A DNA stretch of 57,281 nt, the filler included, from Platydemus manokwari (Eukaryota), in assembly GCA_037951405.1 (NCBI GenBank). It is 5 parts of 5 records of this genome, joined end to end, with 100 filler letters (N's around TTAATTAATTAA, not from the genome) between each part and the next. Parts side by side here need not be neighbours in the genome. Positions count along the whole stretch, not along the records: positions 48,243 to 57,281 come from JBBMOY011309649.1; 4 more parts are not named here. One strand, 5' to 3'. A model generated the notes under the pieces. The model did no database searches. It was not told the DNA's origin and saw only the letters and a list, made by a program, of their open reading frames with translations. Position 1 is the stretch's first letter, and every line of letters begins with the position of its first letter. Below, one piece after another: positions 48,243 through 57,281 of the stretch. A program made the position numbers and the translations under genes.

Positions 48243-48248
48243 ATAGAA

Positions 48249-48250
<2 letters not shown>

Positions 48251-48299
<49 letters not shown>
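48251..48299. repeat. (AAT)n microsatellite
   Basis: About 16 AAT units in a FANCD2 intron at the contig edge. Confidence 0.95.
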
Positions 48300-48314
48300 T
48301 TGTTATAAACATAC

Positions 48315-51300
48315 CATCACTGTCACAGATTTCAATGCATTTATTTAATATTAATTTAAATAAACCACTCATCTCGACGATCTTCTTGATAATTGTTTCT
48401 TCGTCCATTGCATCAATATTTCGGAACAAAACTTGATTTTTTTGGCTAATGAATATTATAAATCAATAAATTGTCCCAATGAAGATATTGTATAATAATA
48501 GAGGTTCCAAAAAATAATAAATATTATATAATATTCATATTAATCCAAATAATTTCATTTAATAGTGAACAGATCATTGATGGATATCGAATAGTTTACA
48601 TAATCATCCAACGAAAAGATTCGTCATAATTAAACAATTCTGTACACAGTGTCAAAACATCTCACCTCGTGTATAAAAGAACTTATATTGGCATTATATT
48701 AAAACCGTATGATTTGCAAGTCTGTGGAAAGTGAAAACATCAATTTTCGAATTCAATACACAAAGTTCCACAATTACATGAACATGAATTATCATAAAAC
48801 AAGATTTCTCTAAATTACCATTTCTCTAATCTCTAATATGAGGTGCGTTATTGTCGAATAAGACGAGGAGCCTAATTGGAAAATAAATATAATGAAGAAA
48901 TCAGCAGCACTATTTATCGAAACTTTTAATTTGATATTCTATCAATATTAAACAAAAATTATGAGGCATACCGTGCATGAAATGTCTTTATCAGGTTGAA
49001 TCATAGGCACATGTATTTACCTAATATGATGCATTGAATTCTTTCATATTATAGACTCACGACCGAATAATGCAAATACCGGTCAGAGATATAAAAACCC
49101 ACAAAGTACATCGTTCATTTAGAAAAGAAATTATGGTACGTCAAATCAAAATCAAGGATGAACATGGAGATTGAAAACGTAAAGTAAGTATTAAATGTCC
49201 GATAACTGAACCAAGACTTCTTGTAAACACTTATAAAAGCATGAACTACTTCGAAAAGTAGTCCAGAAATGAAGACCCTACTGAACAGTCGAGCTACACT
49301 TTCATCGCAAGAGTACCTAGATGAGGGACCCCACAAAATATCACAATCCTAAATAAGCTTGGATTTAATGCGAAAAGGACGAAGGAAATTGTGATAGAAT
49401 ACATAAAAGCGAACACAGAATCAAGTTGGTACGACAATACTACCAAAATCAAGCAAGCTTCAAAAGGAAGTTGGGCGAAGAAAAAGAATTGAAATGAATG
49501 AAGACAAAGAAAGCTCTAAATATTAAATGATAAATGATTGCTCCACAGATCACTAAAGCATTGAAATCACGATGACCTTTAAAAGAAAAAGAAGTTGAAT
49601 AGGAAAACACTAAGTATAGCAATCTGTGATAAGGGAATAGTTTGAAATAAATAGTTGTTAAGCTTATAATAATGAAAACATAACAAGAAAATTAACATTT
49701 TTCATAGCTGAATTACATAATTTTCATTAAATGTCTAAGAAAATCAATATATAATTTGATGTAGTGCCTGTTTGTATTAATAAAAGCATATTATTATAAT
49801 ATTATTATTATTATTAATTACTTCATTAAAATCAATAAATGATCGTATATTATGTTTTCCAAAACAACAGAACATCTTCACCAGTGCTTTCAATCAATTA
49901 AATCAATAATTTTAGTGCTAAAGTTATAAATTAATTCCAAAACGTCGGATTAAATATTTTCAGAATGATATACACATTTAATTAATAATACCAAAATCAT
50001 CACCCACCTGATGGCTCCAAGAAATCCCGTCTTATCTCGCAAACAATGTTTGATCTTCAATAATAAATCGGATAGAAAAAACACCAACTCATTCCATGAC
50101 AAACAATCATCGATCGAATCGGCAGCCAATATCATATTCGCTCGAGCCAGAACAGCCAACATGGAATGAACGGATAAATCGATTTCTCGGAAACACACAC
50201 ACAAACAATCGTGTAATATTTTGCATTTTAAATTTTTATCGTCGACCGCTACCGTCGATCTGTTGTCATCTTCAATCAACTCGTTATCCAAATCAATAAT
50301 CGATTGGCATTTATCGATTTCCATTTCATCCAATTTCGCTTTCTTCGATTTAAATGCTCGTTTGACTGGTTTTCGACGAACAAGTGGTTTCTTCACTTCG
50401 GTCACCGAAATCCAATTTCTTCCGACAGCGGTATCGATTGTGGGCAATTTTATCGGTTTGGAAGACGAACTCAAAACGGTTTCCAGATTATTGATTTGAC
50501 TGACGACCAATTTCATCCGTTTCAACATTGTCTCGTGGAAATTGTCCACTCCACCTTCCAGTGGGTCTTGTGAGAATGCATTGACCACTTCAATCAACCA
50601 ATTAATGAACGTTAACAATTCCATTGGACATGCTTCATCCAATGAATCGCGGAACACAATCGGACAACCCAATAAAGCATTGATTTCCGTCAAATTCTGT
50701 TTGATTCTCAACTCGAAAAATGCCAACAACCGAAGATGGACCGGTAAATTGATGTGGACGATTTTTTCGGATCGATTTAAAGAATGTTTCGTTCGGGAAA
50801 CCATGATAGCCACATCACAATAATCCATTCCAACCAATCCAAACAACGGTTTCATTCCATCGTTATCTGTGTTGATATTACAAATGAAAATGTCCTGAAA
50901 CGAATTGGCAATCATTTTACTGATTTCTTTTTCCATCAATTTCATTTCGCCCAACGAAACCAATCGATACAATTCGTCAAAAACGACAATTATCAATTCT
51001 GGAGATGTTTCAGAATACGATAATAATAATTTCAAGATCGTCGATACTATTCGCTGAGAAATGCCGTTATCACTATCGTTACTGCTATTGGAGAAATCAA
51101 TTTCAGAATCGGGCTGATTGGCTATCATATTAAAGATATTATTGATCGATTGTGACGTATTGCAATCCTGATTGGCTAAATATTTCATCAATGTCACGGC
51201 ACCGATTCCACCATTTCTTCGAGTTATAAAATCGGAATTTTCTAATTGCTCTTTTATCAACAAAATGACATTGTTTCTCATATTTTCCCGTCCATCACTG

Positions 51301-52782
51301 ACGAAAACGTCATCGTTCACCGTTTCTTGGAAGGCCATTGCTCCTAAAATGCAATAAATCGTATAAATATGATTGCATTGCAAATCAATCGATTTCGACA
51401 GCAAATTAGAAATATGCAATTGAAACGGTTGGATTTTGTATTTGCAATTTTCCACCAAATATTTCAGAATTTCCAAAATGCCATCGACAACATTTTTCTG
51501 TTTCACACAGACATTCATTATCAAACAATCGAAAATCGTTTCTTCCGGAAATTCCGTCGTCGGATTCATAAAGCAATGAAAGTAAGCAATTTTCCCAAAG
51601 TTTACGAAAACTTTCCCATTCGATGCCAACATGGAATTGATAATTTTTAAGAAACTCCCATAGTAGGGTTGTAATAAATCCAAATGATATCTAATCAGAG
51701 TCTCAATGGTGTTGTCGGTAAATTGTTTTTTGGCGATTTTCGATTTGATTAAATTCAAAACTGGAACGTTTTCATTTTTATAGTCATGGAAGATTATCAG
51801 TAGCATGAAGAAATCGAAATTTTCCGATCGAACCTGACTGGATTTGTCGGAAATTGATTTCAACCATGATTTTCGAAGAGATGGATTAAATTGCAAATTG
51901 TTTCTTATCGAATTAATCAATTGAACAGCAGAATTGGAAGAGCTCGGAATGTAATTGAGGGGAGTCGAACTGAAAGCAGTACAAAACATGCTTTGTAAAT
52001 TGTCAAATTCAACATTCAGGCGAACTTTGTCGATGAGGTTGATTTGGTCTGGTCTATTTGTACATTTCAATAGGAAGGTTATGATCGCTGGCAGCGCACT
52101 CATTGCAGCTGTATCCAGCATTTCTGTCACAATCAATTCGACTCTGTTCAAGAAGTTTGCTCCCAAATCAAGTTTACTGATCGTATCTAACGAAGAACAA
52201 ATCAAATGATTATTACTCGACATCCAATCCAATAATTTTTCGGCTAAAATTGCATTGCATTGTCCTTGACAAATGTCGGGAAAAATTCTAATCAAATAAT
52301 TTTGTACGGAATTATTCGAAATATAACCTAAATCGAGTAATTTTTCCACAATTTGGCTCATGTTTTTGTTATAGATATTCCATTTGAATTGATTCAGACA
52401 AAGGATTGCCAATTGATTATCATCTTCAATGTTATTTAATGTCAATTCACAAACCTTTTCAATTAATAATTCCACCAAAAAACTACTCAATTCAGTTATC
52501 ATCAATATAATTTGACACAGTGACTTTGGTGTGGTAAATAGATGTATATCAAAATTTGAATTTACGGGTTGTAGAATCTTATATAATTCATCTCGATCAT
52601 TTATAATATGGGAAATTATTTCTTTAAATTTTTCAAATGTAGAAATATTTCCTTTTGTTAGTAGTTCTTTAAGATTTGCAATAACCATTTCAGTTGGAAA
52701 TCTTTGAACAAAACTATAACCATCAGGTTCGATACCACATTTTGAAAATATTTGGTTTAAGTTTCGAACGTAATCTGTCTTG
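48315..52782 (-). CDS. FANCD2: Fanconi anemia group D2 protein (partial)
   Basis: A large exon ~52782-50008 has LIKEQL...GGIGAVTL, LRLL, LTEINALLGCPI, FINWLIEVVNAFSQ, FREIDLSV and ELVFFLSDL..KI, all matching FANCD2 blocks. A phase-compatible next exon 48445-48315 reads QKNQVLFRNID...ETIIKKIV. The start exon and 3' exons are not visible. Confidence 0.9.
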
Positions 52783-53989
52783 CTAAAATTGCAATATAAC
52801 ACATCAATTGAATATTATTAAATAATAATTTATACTTCATATGAAATTTAAAATATGTTTGAGAAATATTATTTAAACAGTCGTCGTACTTAATTTTTAA
52901 ATTATAATTTTCAATTTATTAATATATAATATCAGGATGACTCTGATATAAGTTAAAGAATTAAAAATTAAAGACTTCGTTAATTGCATTTATCTAAATT
53001 TTTAGTCATTATATATTTTGCAAAAATTTTATCCGAATTTTTAAAGATCGCATAGGATCTGGCTGCCTTTTTGTATATTTAATCTGATGAAATAAGAAAA
53101 ACATAGGCAATTATATCAATGAAAATATAAATCTAGTTTATAAATAGACTATAGAATAATTTAGGTCTTATAAATTTAATTATAAACATAAAATTTCTCA
53201 TCATAATTGTTTCACAATTGAATGTCTATCGTAATATATCGATTTCAATAAAATAGAAACTTCTGGATTGTTAAAAATACTACCCTGATAACCGAGATTT
53301 GGGATTCAGTTGTAAGATTTCCAAAAGTGTGTATAAATAATTATTACAGCCTTACCCATCGTCAATTAAATATTAAGCAATGCATCAATTTTAATTATAT
53401 TTTTACCATTCGATTATCGACTATAGATTGATCAAACTTTGGTTTTGGTTTTAAAATAATAAATCGTAATATCGACAAATTTTATATTATAATAAACAAT
53501 ATAAAATCTTTAATTTAACTTTTATAAATCTTTTTAGAAAGTTTTTTAATTTAAAAATAAAGTTCATTTTATGCCACAAAATATTTAGAGTGTGTAATTT
53601 GACGTTTTGTCAGTTGATAGTCAATTTATTTAGATAATACTTAATGCTTTTAGTATCGATTCAGTGTCATTTGTTATTTTGAAAAATCATATTTTCTGAC
53701 TTATCCCTATTATCATAAATTAAATTTATCGATTAATTGGAGTGTGACAGAAAGTGCTTTTAAATTTTTCAAAAATCATTTTAGGTTGAGTAACGATATC
53801 ATTTATTCAGAGTTACATCATTGTAAAAGTCCCTGATGATGATATGCTTATAAGATCCACCTAGACGGATAATCTAAAAATAATTGATGATATTCGAAAT
53901 AAATTATTTAATATCGTTTATTTTTGAAAGCATCCTGAGTTATTTTACAATTCATTTAATCATAGTAAACTTCAATATATTTTAAATAT

Positions 53990-54900
53990 CACTTGAAAGA
54001 TGGGATTATAGTAAATCAAGGGATTGTATATCAATTAAAGGGTCTAAAAGCTGACCAATGATAAAATTAGGGCATAATTGACTTTAAATTAACTATATCG
54101 GTTACCGAAATTTTATCTTCTCGGAATATTTTTCAGATGATAACTTCTCGAGAAAAGATGTGATGGCTACCGGAATATTTATTTAATATAAATCAACCTA
54201 AACATGAAATCAATCAGTTCTCATGATGAGTAATTTAAATGGATAATTTCCAAGCTAAGCATCATGACAACTAAAATCGGACCTAATTTTGATGTAATTG
54301 GAGCCATACTAATTCAAGTCATCGAATATCGTAATAAAATTGTTATAGCTTACGTCTCTTGCCATCTGAGGAATAACAAGAAGAGTTATTATGTATGCTT
54401 AATATCTTTTAACAGACAATATCTTTATTGAAAGAGGTTCAATTCTATAACGAATCACGAGGTATGGAATGCCTCGAAAAAGTCCATTGTTCAAAATGTA
54501 GATGGGTAGAAGTACGATTTAGAACTGCGCTGTAGAAAAGGAGAATAGCAATGCATATGCTATGTTATGAATTGGTGAAAATTATGTTAGCAGTATCGGA
54601 CTAAGCAGGAGAATGCCAAAATAAATAAACCGAAGACAAGATAACAGGCACAAATTCAATATGAACCAGATTTTATCCGAAACATAATGAAAGAACAACA
54701 GAAGGGATAAAATAAGGTTTAAGAATTCAAATTACCGGATAATGTAGAATTTTGGAAAACAATTCTCTGCAAGAAGTTAAAGATGGAATATTTGTAGTGG
54801 ACAGAAACGACAATATTGATTTTGTTGAACCAAGCAAATATACAAAGGAAATTGGTCAAACATATGCCATTTTAGAAGCAAAAAAAATTCTGAATTTTTA
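53990..54900 (+). pseudogene. Highly degenerate Gypsy RT/RNase H remnant
   Basis: IGAILIQ...IVIAYVSCHL...KSY and YLY.KRF..ITNH RNase H-like motifs. Confidence 0.6.
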
Positions 54901-55395
54901 GAATATAGCTTTCATTTACACCATACACTTACACGACCATCAGGCTATCATAAAACCATGTTTGGTTTCGCTAAAGTACAGATCAATATTCAACAAATAA
55001 ATAATACTGGATTAAATTTGGTAACTTTAAAAAATATAAAAATAATCAATACCATTGTACAACCTGATTATCAAAAAGGTTCAAATTGGAAATTTCTTAA
55101 GACTTCTAACAATAATTTATTTACGCGAGTAAAACAAAATGCATTAACAAATATCATTTCGAACCAAGTAAAGCTCGGTTATTGATCATATAAATATTAG
55201 AAATGCAAACTTTTTAAAATCATTTACTAATATCCAAATCCATGTTCGCAAATTGGAAGAATTATTCTAAAATAAATTGTTATCAAAACCTTAAGATAAA
55301 CTAAATTTATTGACAAAATCGACAACTAAAGTGAGCAAATTCGGAAATTAAATCTATGATCAGAACATTATTCAGACTTAAAATACATAGCATAT

Positions 55396-55914
55396 TTAAA
55401 ATCCTTTTGCCTTTTCTTTAAAATATTGAACACCTTGTTGTGCATATTCCGGTGATTTAACAATTTGATCAAAAGTATACTTGACTCCTATAATACAAAT
55501 ATGTAGATTTTTAATTATTAAATAAATGTTTATAAAAATTATAAAACATGAAACAAAAACTGAAATTCAAAGTATTTTTATTTCGGTTATAATATGGAAT
55601 AACCTTCATTCCAGCGATGTTTGGCAAGTTCTTTAATTTCACCAGCTTTGGTGGGAATCTAAATCATTCATTTTAAAATAAGCTATTAAACATAATGTAA
55701 AATCTACAATTTCATAAGATTTTGCCATTACAGAGTGGCGTAATTTATTTAATGGATCTTTACTAACATTGTTATCGGACCAGACTCCGGCTTTTACTGT
55801 GAAATATAACACACCTGCAGCGACGGAAACTTTTGTGGATAAACTAAATATATCAAAACAATATTTCACAACAAATAAACGAATCTACCTTATTAATTTT
55901 GCAAATTTATGCAT
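55396..55914 (-). CDS. MICOS13: MICOS complex subunit MIC13/QIL1, complete
   Basis: Four GT-AG exons 55914-55889, 55843-55708, 55658-55604, 55487-55396 give MHKFAKLISLSTKVSVAAGVLYFTVKAGVWSD...KHRWNEGVKYTF...SPEYAQQGVQYFKEKAKGF*. The K..VA.G..Y / GVW and WN.G motifs are characteristic of QIL1. Confidence 0.88.
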
Positions 55915-57281
55915 AATTTAAAAATATTATTCAAATTGATAGTAATTTTAAAAGATTCAAACAATGTTTTACTACAAATTTCTCAAAATTGCTTAATTCT
56001 TTGGAGATCTAATTAATACAATCAAAACAACCATATGAAATAATTCAATGTTCAATATGTTCAAATTAGAGTCCTTTAATTTATTAAATTCATCATAAAT
56101 TAATATTTATATAAAAAAATGATGTTAAAAAAATTTGGACTTAAATATTTTAATTTCATATGAAATATAAAAATAAAAAAAATATATTTTAATTAAAAAC
56201 ATTAATTTTGAAATGTTCTATCTTAAATTTATTTTAGAAAATGTAATTCATAATCGTTAATTATTTTGCTAGTGTATGTGTTTAAAAGCATTAACAATTT
56301 AATTTATTTTCAAAATTGTTTTCAAATGGATATAAAAATATTTGGATATTTATACTACTTTAATAAAGGTATTTACAATACATTTTTATAGATATATATT
56401 TTTAATAATATATCTTATTAATGATAATTTCATCACATGACGAAATTGTTATATTTTAAAAATGAATTAATTCGTCAAAAAAATACAAAAAATACATTTT
56501 AATAAAATCATTATCTTTCAATCGCAAAATGACACTAAATCTTTATGGTGAGATTTAAGATTAAACAGATGTTTTATTATTGTGGATTTTGAAATATGCT
56601 AATCAGAGATTTGTTCACAAAGTATATCTGATGTCAGGAGATTGTTGTAGGTTCATAGAGAACGTCTATACTTTCAAATGTGCCATATTTAAGAAATTTC
56701 GACTTATTTAATTTCTCCAAAGAGTATTTCGTAATATAAATAAAAATGATAAGCAAGTTTATACTGATGAGGTCTTGCTAAAATGGAAGGCGAGTTGTTT
56801 GTCAAATTCATCTTGAGTGTTCCAGTTTCTAATCGAGACATTTTCTCATTTCAAGTCTTAATATATGTCTTGTCTTTCATATGAGCCTATTGAAAACTTT
56901 TTCGTTTAATTTTTATTCGTAATTATTAAAAATTAAACTTCGAATAGAACTTTTGACTCTAAGGTTACCGATTTATGGATTATATTATATAATAGTTAGG
57001 TAATGACTTCAGATATCATCGATTGATATTGAAATAAGATTTTATGAATTTAAAATGTGACAGAAATCAATAATTAGCAAAATATAGCAAAATGTATAAA
57101 GGAACCGCGAATAACTTTGAACATAGTATAACTAAAGATTTAAACAAGAAGTTGTTATCAATTCCATCATTCAGAATAACCAATCATATCAGGTTCATCT
57201 TATTTGCACTTCAATGAGTATCATTGTATTTGTGTCTACAGTAAACTTATAAAGTAGTCTTTCATAAAAGACATTATCTAG

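What the first reader, a model, noticed from the sequence alone, without database searches (positions are those of the whole stretch)
51237..51270. FANCD2 monoubiquitination lysine appears replaced (RKQL to KEQL)
Seen: the codons read V-I-L-L-I-K-E-Q-L-E, with GAG at minus 51251-51249. Established: human FANCD2 has HLVIRKQL, where K561 is ubiquitinated by FANCL/UBE2T to lock the FANCI-FANCD2 clamp on DNA. Here the K561-equivalent position is Glu and a Lys sits one residue upstream, while the downstream G-IGAVT block is conserved. Inference: either the acceptor is shifted or the clamp is ubiquitin-independent in a lineage with a reduced FA core complex.
Basis: partly seen in the sequence, partly recalled or inferred. 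Interest (0 to 1): 0.7.

Follow-up and report, generated by a model that had tools for sequence, protein, structure and literature searches.

The report
FANCD2 with displaced ubiquitin-acceptor lysine
This is a real, intact-looking FANCD2 DNA-repair gene from an unidentified AT-rich eukaryote in which the almost universally conserved lysine that receives ubiquitin is a glutamate and a lysine sits one residue earlier, a rare natural variant of the key switch of the Fanconi anaemia pathway.

Summary
A 950-codon open frame on the minus strand (49953-52802) is FANCD2 (Pfam PF14631, E 1.5e-55; predicted fold matches FANCD2 chains at E 3e-23, FANCI chains only at 1e-6). It reads L-L-I-K-E-Q-L with AAA at 51254-51252 and GAG at 51251-51249.

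Pairwise HMMER, MAFFT and a profile alignment of 140 homologues all put the Glu in the human K561 column. There is no gap before the conserved G-x-x-G-A block. That column is the most conserved in the family (K in 139 of 140). The only other exception is Hydra vulgaris, with Arg.

The protein is otherwise ordinarily divergent, keeping 81% of the 53 columns with at least 80% consensus. Lys at -1 occurs in only 10 of 140 homologues. A separate contig build of the only public run holding the locus gives identical sequence at word depth 17.6.

My preferred reading, at about 45%, is that the acceptor moved by one residue through a K-K intermediate. True loss of ubiquitination is about 30%. A divergent second copy, decaying gene or error is about 20%.

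The organism, its FANCI, FANCL and UBE2T, and the C-terminal third of the gene could not be examined. No relative above 29% identity exists in the libraries searched.

The parts
50008..52782 (-). Large FANCD2 exon of about 925 codons inside the open frame 49953-52802. Putative acceptor ttttag ends at 52783. Putative donor is CAG|GTGGGT, with GT at 50007-50006.
   Evidence: Open frame. Pfam PF14631 at E 1.5e-55, profile positions 103-981 of 1418. Human FANCD2 chains at E 1.5e-34. Family profile columns 53-951 at E 5e-123. Splice-like motifs read; no RNA data confirms the boundaries.
51249..51251 (-). GAG, Glu518 in open-frame numbering, in the column of human K561, the ubiquitin-acceptor lysine.
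   Evidence: The column is K in 139 of 140 homologues.
51252..51254 (-). AAA, Lys517, in the column of human R560. This is the candidate displaced acceptor.
   Evidence: The column is R 99, Q 12, K 10 of 140. At other Arg-consensus columns the query has Lys in 1 of 11.
51270..51275 (-). AAC AAT, Asn-Asn at positions -8 and -7. Position -7 is Asp or Glu in 126 of 140 homologues.
51192..51212 (-). The G-G-I-G-A-V-T block at the start of the next helix, conserved and in register with human G-I-I-G-A-V-T.
   Evidence: G 136/138 and G 113/138.
48253..48462 (-). Tentative next FANCD2 exon (…FRNIDAMDEETIIKKIVEMSGLFKLILNKCIEIC…), after an intron of about 1.55 kb. The rest of the C-terminal ~450 residues lies beyond the edge of the piece.
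   Evidence: Best secondary match of the family profile: columns 961-999, colinear, same strand, but E about 1. Not significant on its own.

Best explanation
The piece carries a functional but fast-evolving FANCD2 orthologue in which the ubiquitin-acceptor lysine has moved one residue towards the N-terminus. The usual R-K-Q-L has become K-E-Q-L. The likely route is R-K to K-K to K-E. K-K is a state seen in about 7% of living FANCD2 sequences, so a lysine would have been available at every step. On this reading, Lys517 near the C-terminal end of the helix equivalent to human alpha31 is modified by the organism's FANCL/UBE2T-type enzymes, and the ubiquitin locks the FANCI-FANCD2 clamp on DNA as in other eukaryotes.

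Shown here:
- The gene is FANCD2.
- Glu occupies the K561 column and Lys the R560 column.
- The rest of the protein keeps most family-conserved residues.
- Both residues lie in a confidently modelled helix end.

Inferred, not shown:
- That Lys517 is actually ubiquitinated.
- That the enzymes exist in this genome.
For: - Family and fold: Pfam FancD2 at E 1.5e-55. The AlphaFold model (pLDDT 81.9, pTM 0.79) matches FANCD2 chains at E 3e-23 and TM up to 0.64, against 1e-6 for FANCI chains.
- Register: three kinds of alignment agree without gaps.
- Constraint kept elsewhere: the 950-codon frame is open in DNA of about 35% G+C. The query matches consensus at 81% of the 53 columns with at least 80% consensus, ranking 20th lowest of 110, and at 9 of the 11 columns with at least 95% consensus where it has a residue.
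- Lys at -1 is uncommon: 10 of 140 homologues. The query turns conserved Arg into Lys at only 1 of 11 other columns. Finding a Lys next to the lost acceptor is therefore about ten times likelier under compensation than by chance.
- K-K intermediates exist, for example P0090, P0127, P0141 and P0149.
- K and E lie in the last 1.5 turns of helix 497-516 in model numbering, where block pLDDT is 94. Human K561 is on helix alpha31, 'where ubiquitin is conjugated' (PMC9890228).
- From general knowledge, not tested here: several E2/E3 pairs accept a lysine moved by one position, for example H2A K118/K119.
Against: - K561 is kept in 139 of 140 homologues even where -1 is also Lys. This argues that the exact position matters.
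- UBE2T-FANCL is described as strictly site-specific, and K561R abolishes modification (bioRxiv 10.1101/429076).
- One residue along a helix turns the side chain by about 100 degrees.
- The local signature is also eroded. The acidic -7 residue (D/E in 126 of 140) is Asn, and the K/R-Y pair at +8/+9 is I-T. The local score of 4 out of 9 is among the three lowest of 136. This fits a site that is no longer recognised.
- Hydra vulgaris shows that the lysine can be lost with no neighbouring lysine.
- There is no RNA evidence and no sister species. FANCI, FANCL and UBE2T were not seen, and the C-terminal third of the gene was not seen either.
Confidence: 0.45

Rival explanations
1. The acceptor site has truly been lost. 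This FANCD2 is not monoubiquitinated and works, if at all, in a ubiquitin-independent way. It might bind DNA or close the clamp through other means such as FANCI phosphorylation, or it might keep only the non-crosslink roles of FANCD2. The Lys at -1 would then be incidental.
For: - Glu sits in the family's most conserved column.
- The neighbouring recognition-like features are lost together: Asn for the acidic -7 residue, Asn at -8, I-T for K/R-Y at +8/+9. The local score is in the bottom three of 136.
- The terminal branch is very long, 2.38 against a median of 0.74.
- Hydra vulgaris FANCD2 has Arg at the site and Phe at -1 in protein clusters from two separate genome records. Natural lysine-less FANCD2 therefore seems to exist.
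- Phosphomimetic FANCI can close the clamp without the core complex (cited in PMC9890228).
Against: - The Lys at -1 is improbable by chance, about 7-9%.
- The rest of the protein is conserved at a level normal for the family.
- Other homologues with equally eroded flanks still keep the lysine, for example Paulinella P0003 with score 3 and P0042 with score 4. Flank erosion therefore does not predict loss.
- In human cells K561R is as bad as a null for crosslink repair (PMC9890228 discussion).
Confidence: 0.3
2. The locus is not the organism's working FANCD2. It could be a divergent second copy or a young pseudogene, with a canonical copy elsewhere, so the substitution has no consequence for the pathway.
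For: - Only a 9-kb piece is available.
- No start-codon exon was found upstream.
- The C-terminal ~450 residues are not in the piece, and the only candidate next exon scores E about 1.
- The branch is very long and no relative exceeds 29% identity.
- No RNA run holds the locus.
Against: - A 950-codon frame free of stops in DNA of about 35% G+C would not stay open by chance. At about 7% stop codons per random codon the chance is about 1e-31 (my own arithmetic).
- 81% of strongly conserved columns are kept.
- The fold is predicted with confidence.
- The exon contig has about twice the word depth of its flanks (17.6 against 9-13) and no variant. That would fit a conserved exon between diverged haplotypes, though this is weak.
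Confidence: 0.15
3. A sequencing or assembly error produced GAG in place of AAG.
For: A single run holds the sequence, so there is no independent sample.
Against: Logan's separate contig build of that run is identical over 49829-53035 at word depth 17.6, with no alternative letters. The Lys at -1 needs a second, separate base difference from the usual Arg codon.
Confidence: 0.03

Closest known systems
Canonical FANCD2 (human K561, within H-L-V-I-R-K-Q-L; solved in 6VAA/6VAE/7KZV and others)
   Same: Same Pfam family and fold. The helix-loop-helix around the site is the same. Q-L after the site and the G-x-x-G-A block are in register. The model's best TM scores (0.60-0.64) are to FANCD2 in closed or ubiquitinated complexes (7KZV, 7ZF1, 6VAE), but I do not read a conformational state from this.
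   Different: Glu instead of the acceptor Lys, and Lys instead of the preceding Arg. Asn instead of the conserved acidic residue at -7. I-T instead of K/R-Y at +8/+9. Overall identity is only 21-29%.
Hydra vulgaris FANCD2 (XP_065673752.1 and the isoform X2 cluster)
   Same: The only other homologue of 140 without Lys in the K561 column. It is seen in protein clusters from two separate genome records.
   Different: Hydra has Arg at the site and Phe at -1, so no nearby replacement lysine. It keeps D-D at -8/-7. It is not specifically related to the query (27% identity, E 3e-14).
FANCD2 orthologues with K-K at the R560/K561 positions (for example P0090, P0127, P0141, P0149)
   Same: They carry a Lys at -1, like the query. 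They are the plausible intermediate state.
   Different: They all keep the canonical Lys as well.
Engineered non-ubiquitinatable FANCD2 (human K561R, Drosophila K595R)
   Same: No lysine in the canonical position.
   Different: These are laboratory alleles with no compensating lysine, and they behave like nulls for crosslink repair (PMC9890228; PMC9339327 listed but not read). The query is a natural allele in an otherwise conserved protein.
FANCI (paralogue, acceptor K523)
   Same: Same superhelical architecture and a distant structural match (E about 1e-6, TM 0.45).
   Different: The query matches FANCD2 far better, by 17 orders of magnitude in Foldseek E-value, and Pfam reports only FancD2.

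Membership tests
FANCD2 (Pfam PF14631, homology family) | Significant match to the family profile above the curated cut-off | tested here: met
   188.9 bits against a cut-off of 27, E 1.5e-55, profile 103-981 of 1418. A family profile built here gives E 5e-123.
FANCD2 (Pfam PF14631, homology family) | FANCD2 fold rather than that of the paralogue FANCI | tested here: met
   Foldseek gives FANCD2 chains E 3e-23 to 1e-16 and FANCI chains about 1e-6. The model has pLDDT 81.9.
FANCD2 (Pfam PF14631, homology family) | C-terminal third (profile columns about 1000-1415), which closes the clamp with the FANCI C-terminus | not testable with these tools
   The piece ends at 48243. Only a tentative exon for columns 961-999 was found.
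Monoubiquitinated FANCD2 (functional class) | Lysine in the K561 column | tested here: not met
   Glu (GAG 51251-51249). The column is K in 139 of 140 homologues.
Monoubiquitinated FANCD2 (functional class) | An alternative lysine within reach of the acceptor position | tested here: met
   Lys517 at -1 on the same helix end. Whether an E2 can use it was not tested.
Monoubiquitinated FANCD2 (functional class) | Conserved acidic or polar residues near the target lysine | tested here: inconclusive
   Position -7 is Asn, where 126 of 140 have D or E. Position -8 is Asn. However, Glu518 now lies next to Lys517. The role of these residues is a proposal in 10.1101/429076.
Monoubiquitinated FANCD2 (functional class) | FANCI partner, FANCL-type E3, UBE2T-type E2 and USP1 in the same genome | not testable with these tools
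   Only the 9-kb piece is available.
Monoubiquitinated FANCD2 (functional class) | Ubiquitin actually attached after DNA damage | not testable with these tools
   Needs proteomics or immunoblotting.

The most novel reading that the evidence does not exclude
FANCD2 monoubiquitination, treated as the invariant switch of the Fanconi anaemia pathway from plants to humans, has been given up independently in at least two eukaryotic lineages: this one (K to E) and Hydra vulgaris (K to R). The protein itself stays under constraint. That would imply an ancestral, ubiquitin-independent core function of the FANCD2 clamp.
Probability: 0.25. Interest if true: 0.75.

Novelty: new variant of a known kind. 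Interest (0 to 1): 0.5.

Why it matters
K561 monoubiquitination is the central event of the Fanconi anaemia pathway. Here it proved to be the most conserved position of the whole family.

If the acceptor has moved, this allele is a ready-made probe of how strictly UBE2T/FANCL read the position of their target. It also suggests a simple test on the human protein, R560K/K561E.

If the site has been lost, FANCD2 has a conserved function that does not need ubiquitin. The Hydra sequence noticed here would be a second, experimentally tractable case.

The practical weight is limited for now. The organism is unidentified, the evidence comes from one sample, and the partner genes could not be examined.

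Tried and rejected
- **Word-based protein search.** The whole frame found nothing. Residues 380-760 found one distant FANCD2. The protein itself is not in that collection, so I did not try looking it up by exact sequence.
- **Exhaustive representative search.** It returned 279 homologues, none above 29% identity, so no sister-species comparison or dN/dS was possible.
- **JGI metagenome scan.** No relative found.
- **Taxonomic placement.** This failed. The top hits mix scallop, Paulinella, a glomeromycete, a tubeworm, a green alga and chelicerates. FastTree groups the query with unnamed metagenome proteins on long branches. One of these lies on a G+C-rich contig (50-67% G+C), so it is not close kin. 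The first tree attempt timed out in MAFFT.
- **Other features in the piece.** Rfam and tRNA scans were empty. From memory I guessed that the open frame at 55642-55884 (minus strand) resembles MIC13/QIL1. Pfam did not support this, so I dropped it.
- **Missing exons.** The search for the C-terminal exons gave only one weak colinear candidate. No start-codon exon was recognisable upstream.
- **A one-residue alignment slip as the explanation.** Rejected. No alignment method introduced a gap, and Q-L and G-x-x-G stay in register.
- **RNA editing as a rescue.** Rejected on first principles: A-to-I editing cannot turn GAG into a lysine codon.
- **FANCI instead of FANCD2.** Rejected.

Full report
**What is there**

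The piece (48243-57281) is AT-rich: 20-30% G+C outside genes and 34-41% in the gene. Its only long open frame runs on the minus strand from 52802 to 49953, 950 codons.

Pfam assigns it to FancD2 (PF14631, E 1.5e-55, 188.9 bits against a cut-off of 27, profile positions 103-981 of 1418). The best solved relatives are human, mouse and chicken FANCD2 (E 1.5e-34 and below). An AlphaFold model built on a 69-sequence alignment (pLDDT 81.9, pTM 0.79) matches FANCD2 chains at Foldseek E 3e-23 (TM up to 0.64). It matches FANCI chains only at about 1e-6. It is FANCD2, not its paralogue.

**Gene model**

- Homology to a family profile built here covers columns 53-951 in one uninterrupted frame (E 5e-123).
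- The frame is flanked by an acceptor-like ttttag ending at 52783 and a donor-like CAG|GTGGGT with GT at 50007-50006, exactly where homology stops.
- The only colinear candidate for the next exon is 48462-48253. It matches profile columns 961-999 but with E about 1, so it is tentative.
- The piece then ends in a (TAT)n run. The C-terminal ~450 residues and the first exon with the start codon were therefore not seen.

**The observation**

HMMER aligns this stretch to human H-L-V-I-R-K-Q-L…G-I-I-G-A-V-T without a gap. MAFFT on 45 sequences, a profile alignment of 140 homologues, and MAFFT on 69 sequences all give the same register. In all of them Q-L after the site and G-x-x-G-A sixteen residues later stay aligned. 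Glu518 therefore corresponds to K561 and Lys517 to R560.

**How unusual it is**

An exhaustive HMMER search of 1.84 billion cluster representatives gave 279 homologues. In the 140 that cover the site:

- The K561 column is K in 139 and R in 1. It is the single most conserved column of the family.
- The one exception is Hydra vulgaris.
- The -1 column is R 99, Q 12, K 10.

The query is not generally degenerate. It matches the consensus at 81% of the 53 columns with at least 80% consensus, ranking 20th lowest of 110. It also matches at 9 of the 11 columns with at least 95% consensus where it has a residue.

Locally, however, several polar features are also gone:

| Position | Family | Query |
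|---|---|---|
| -7 | D/E in 126 of 140 | Asn |
| -8 | D in 70, N in 24 of 140 | Asn |
| +8/+9 | K/R then Y | I-T |

The local signature score is 4 of 9, among the three lowest of 136. Two other low scorers (Paulinella, and P0042) still keep the lysine.

**Is the base call sound?**

Only one public run holds the locus. Its Logan contig, built independently of the window's assembly, spans 49829-53035 with no difference at word depth 17.6. No alternative letters are reported. It is probably the same sample, so this excludes an assembler artefact but is not independent biological support. Reaching K-E from the usual R-K needs two separate substitutions. No RNA run was found.

**Structure**

In the model the site lies in the last one and a half turns of a long helix. 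In model numbering this is helix 497-516, with K at 512 and E at 513 and block pLDDT 94. A three-residue loop follows, then the helix that starts with G-G-I-G-A. This agrees with the literature: human K561 sits on helix alpha31, 'where ubiquitin is conjugated', and becomes exposed when the clamp closes (PMC9890228). I had no coordinates, so the reach of Lys517 towards an E2 active site could not be measured.

**Mechanism: my reading**

I favour a one-residue displacement of the acceptor, at about 45%.

- A Lys at -1 is uncommon: 7% of homologues. The query converts conserved Arg to Lys at only 1 of 11 other columns.
- Extant K-K sequences provide a route, R-K to K-K to K-E, on which a lysine is always present.
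- The protein is otherwise conserved.
- The new Glu next to Lys517 might supply the acidic neighbour that UBE2T's basic residues are proposed to contact (10.1101/429076). This last point is speculation.

Against this reading:

- The canonical position is kept even in K-K lineages.
- UBE2T-FANCL is described as strictly site-specific.
- The side chain rotates by about 100 degrees.
- The flanking signature is eroded.

**Rivals**

- True loss of ubiquitination, about 30%. This is supported by the eroded flanks, the long branch (2.38 against a median of 0.74) and the Hydra precedent. In Hydra, Arg replaces the lysine and Phe precedes it, in protein clusters from two separate genome records.
- A non-principal copy or a decaying gene, about 15%. 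This cannot be excluded from 9 kb. The long open frame, the kept conserved residues and the confident fold argue against decay.
- Sequencing error, about 3%.

**What could not be done**

- The organism is unknown. The top hits span animals, a rhizarian, a fungus and green algae with no taxonomic signal. The tree neighbours are unnamed long-branch metagenome proteins.
- The genome could not be searched for FANCI, FANCL, UBE2T or USP1.
- No sister-species sequence exists in the libraries.

**Verdict**

The interpretation stays open between a shifted and a lost acceptor, with the shift somewhat favoured. This is a new natural variant of a well-known protein. It is of moderate interest and easily testable once the organism is known.

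Noticed in passing
P0108 and P0175 (Hydra vulgaris FANCD2, residues about 470-510): Hydra vulgaris FANCD2 reads D-D-L-Q-E-M-I-F-R-N-L-S-S-S…R-I-G-I-I-G-A. Arg is in the K561 column and Phe is at -1, so no lysine is at or beside the acceptor position. This holds in protein clusters from two separate genome records that are 98% identical. It is the only other exception among 140 homologues.
   Followed up: partly
window 54234-54428 (+), perhaps extending to about 55180: Weak match to the RNase H domain of reverse transcriptases (RT_RNaseH, E 0.02, below the cut-off), followed by a 118-codon open stretch. This is probably a decayed LTR retroelement upstream of FANCD2.
   Followed up: partly
window 48243-48309: A (TAT)n/(ATA)n microsatellite at the edge of the piece. 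The assembly, and Logan's contigs, break there.
   Followed up: no
window 49829-53035 against its flanks: The Logan contig over the FANCD2 exon has about twice the word depth of the flanking contigs (17.6 against 9-13). This would fit two diverged haplotypes that collapse only over the conserved exon. Total Logan contigs for the run are 543 Mb, which suggests a large genome.
   Followed up: no
window, open-frame residue about 106 (family profile column 131): The second most conserved column where the query departs from the family is Q in 99% of 129 homologues (human G-I-D-I-L-Q-P). The query has Ser. The function of this residue is unknown to me.
   Followed up: no
window 55642-55884 (-): An 81-codon open stretch containing …KVSVAAGVLYFTVKAGVW… reminded me of MIC13/QIL1. 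Pfam gave no support, so it is probably not a gene.
   Followed up: partly
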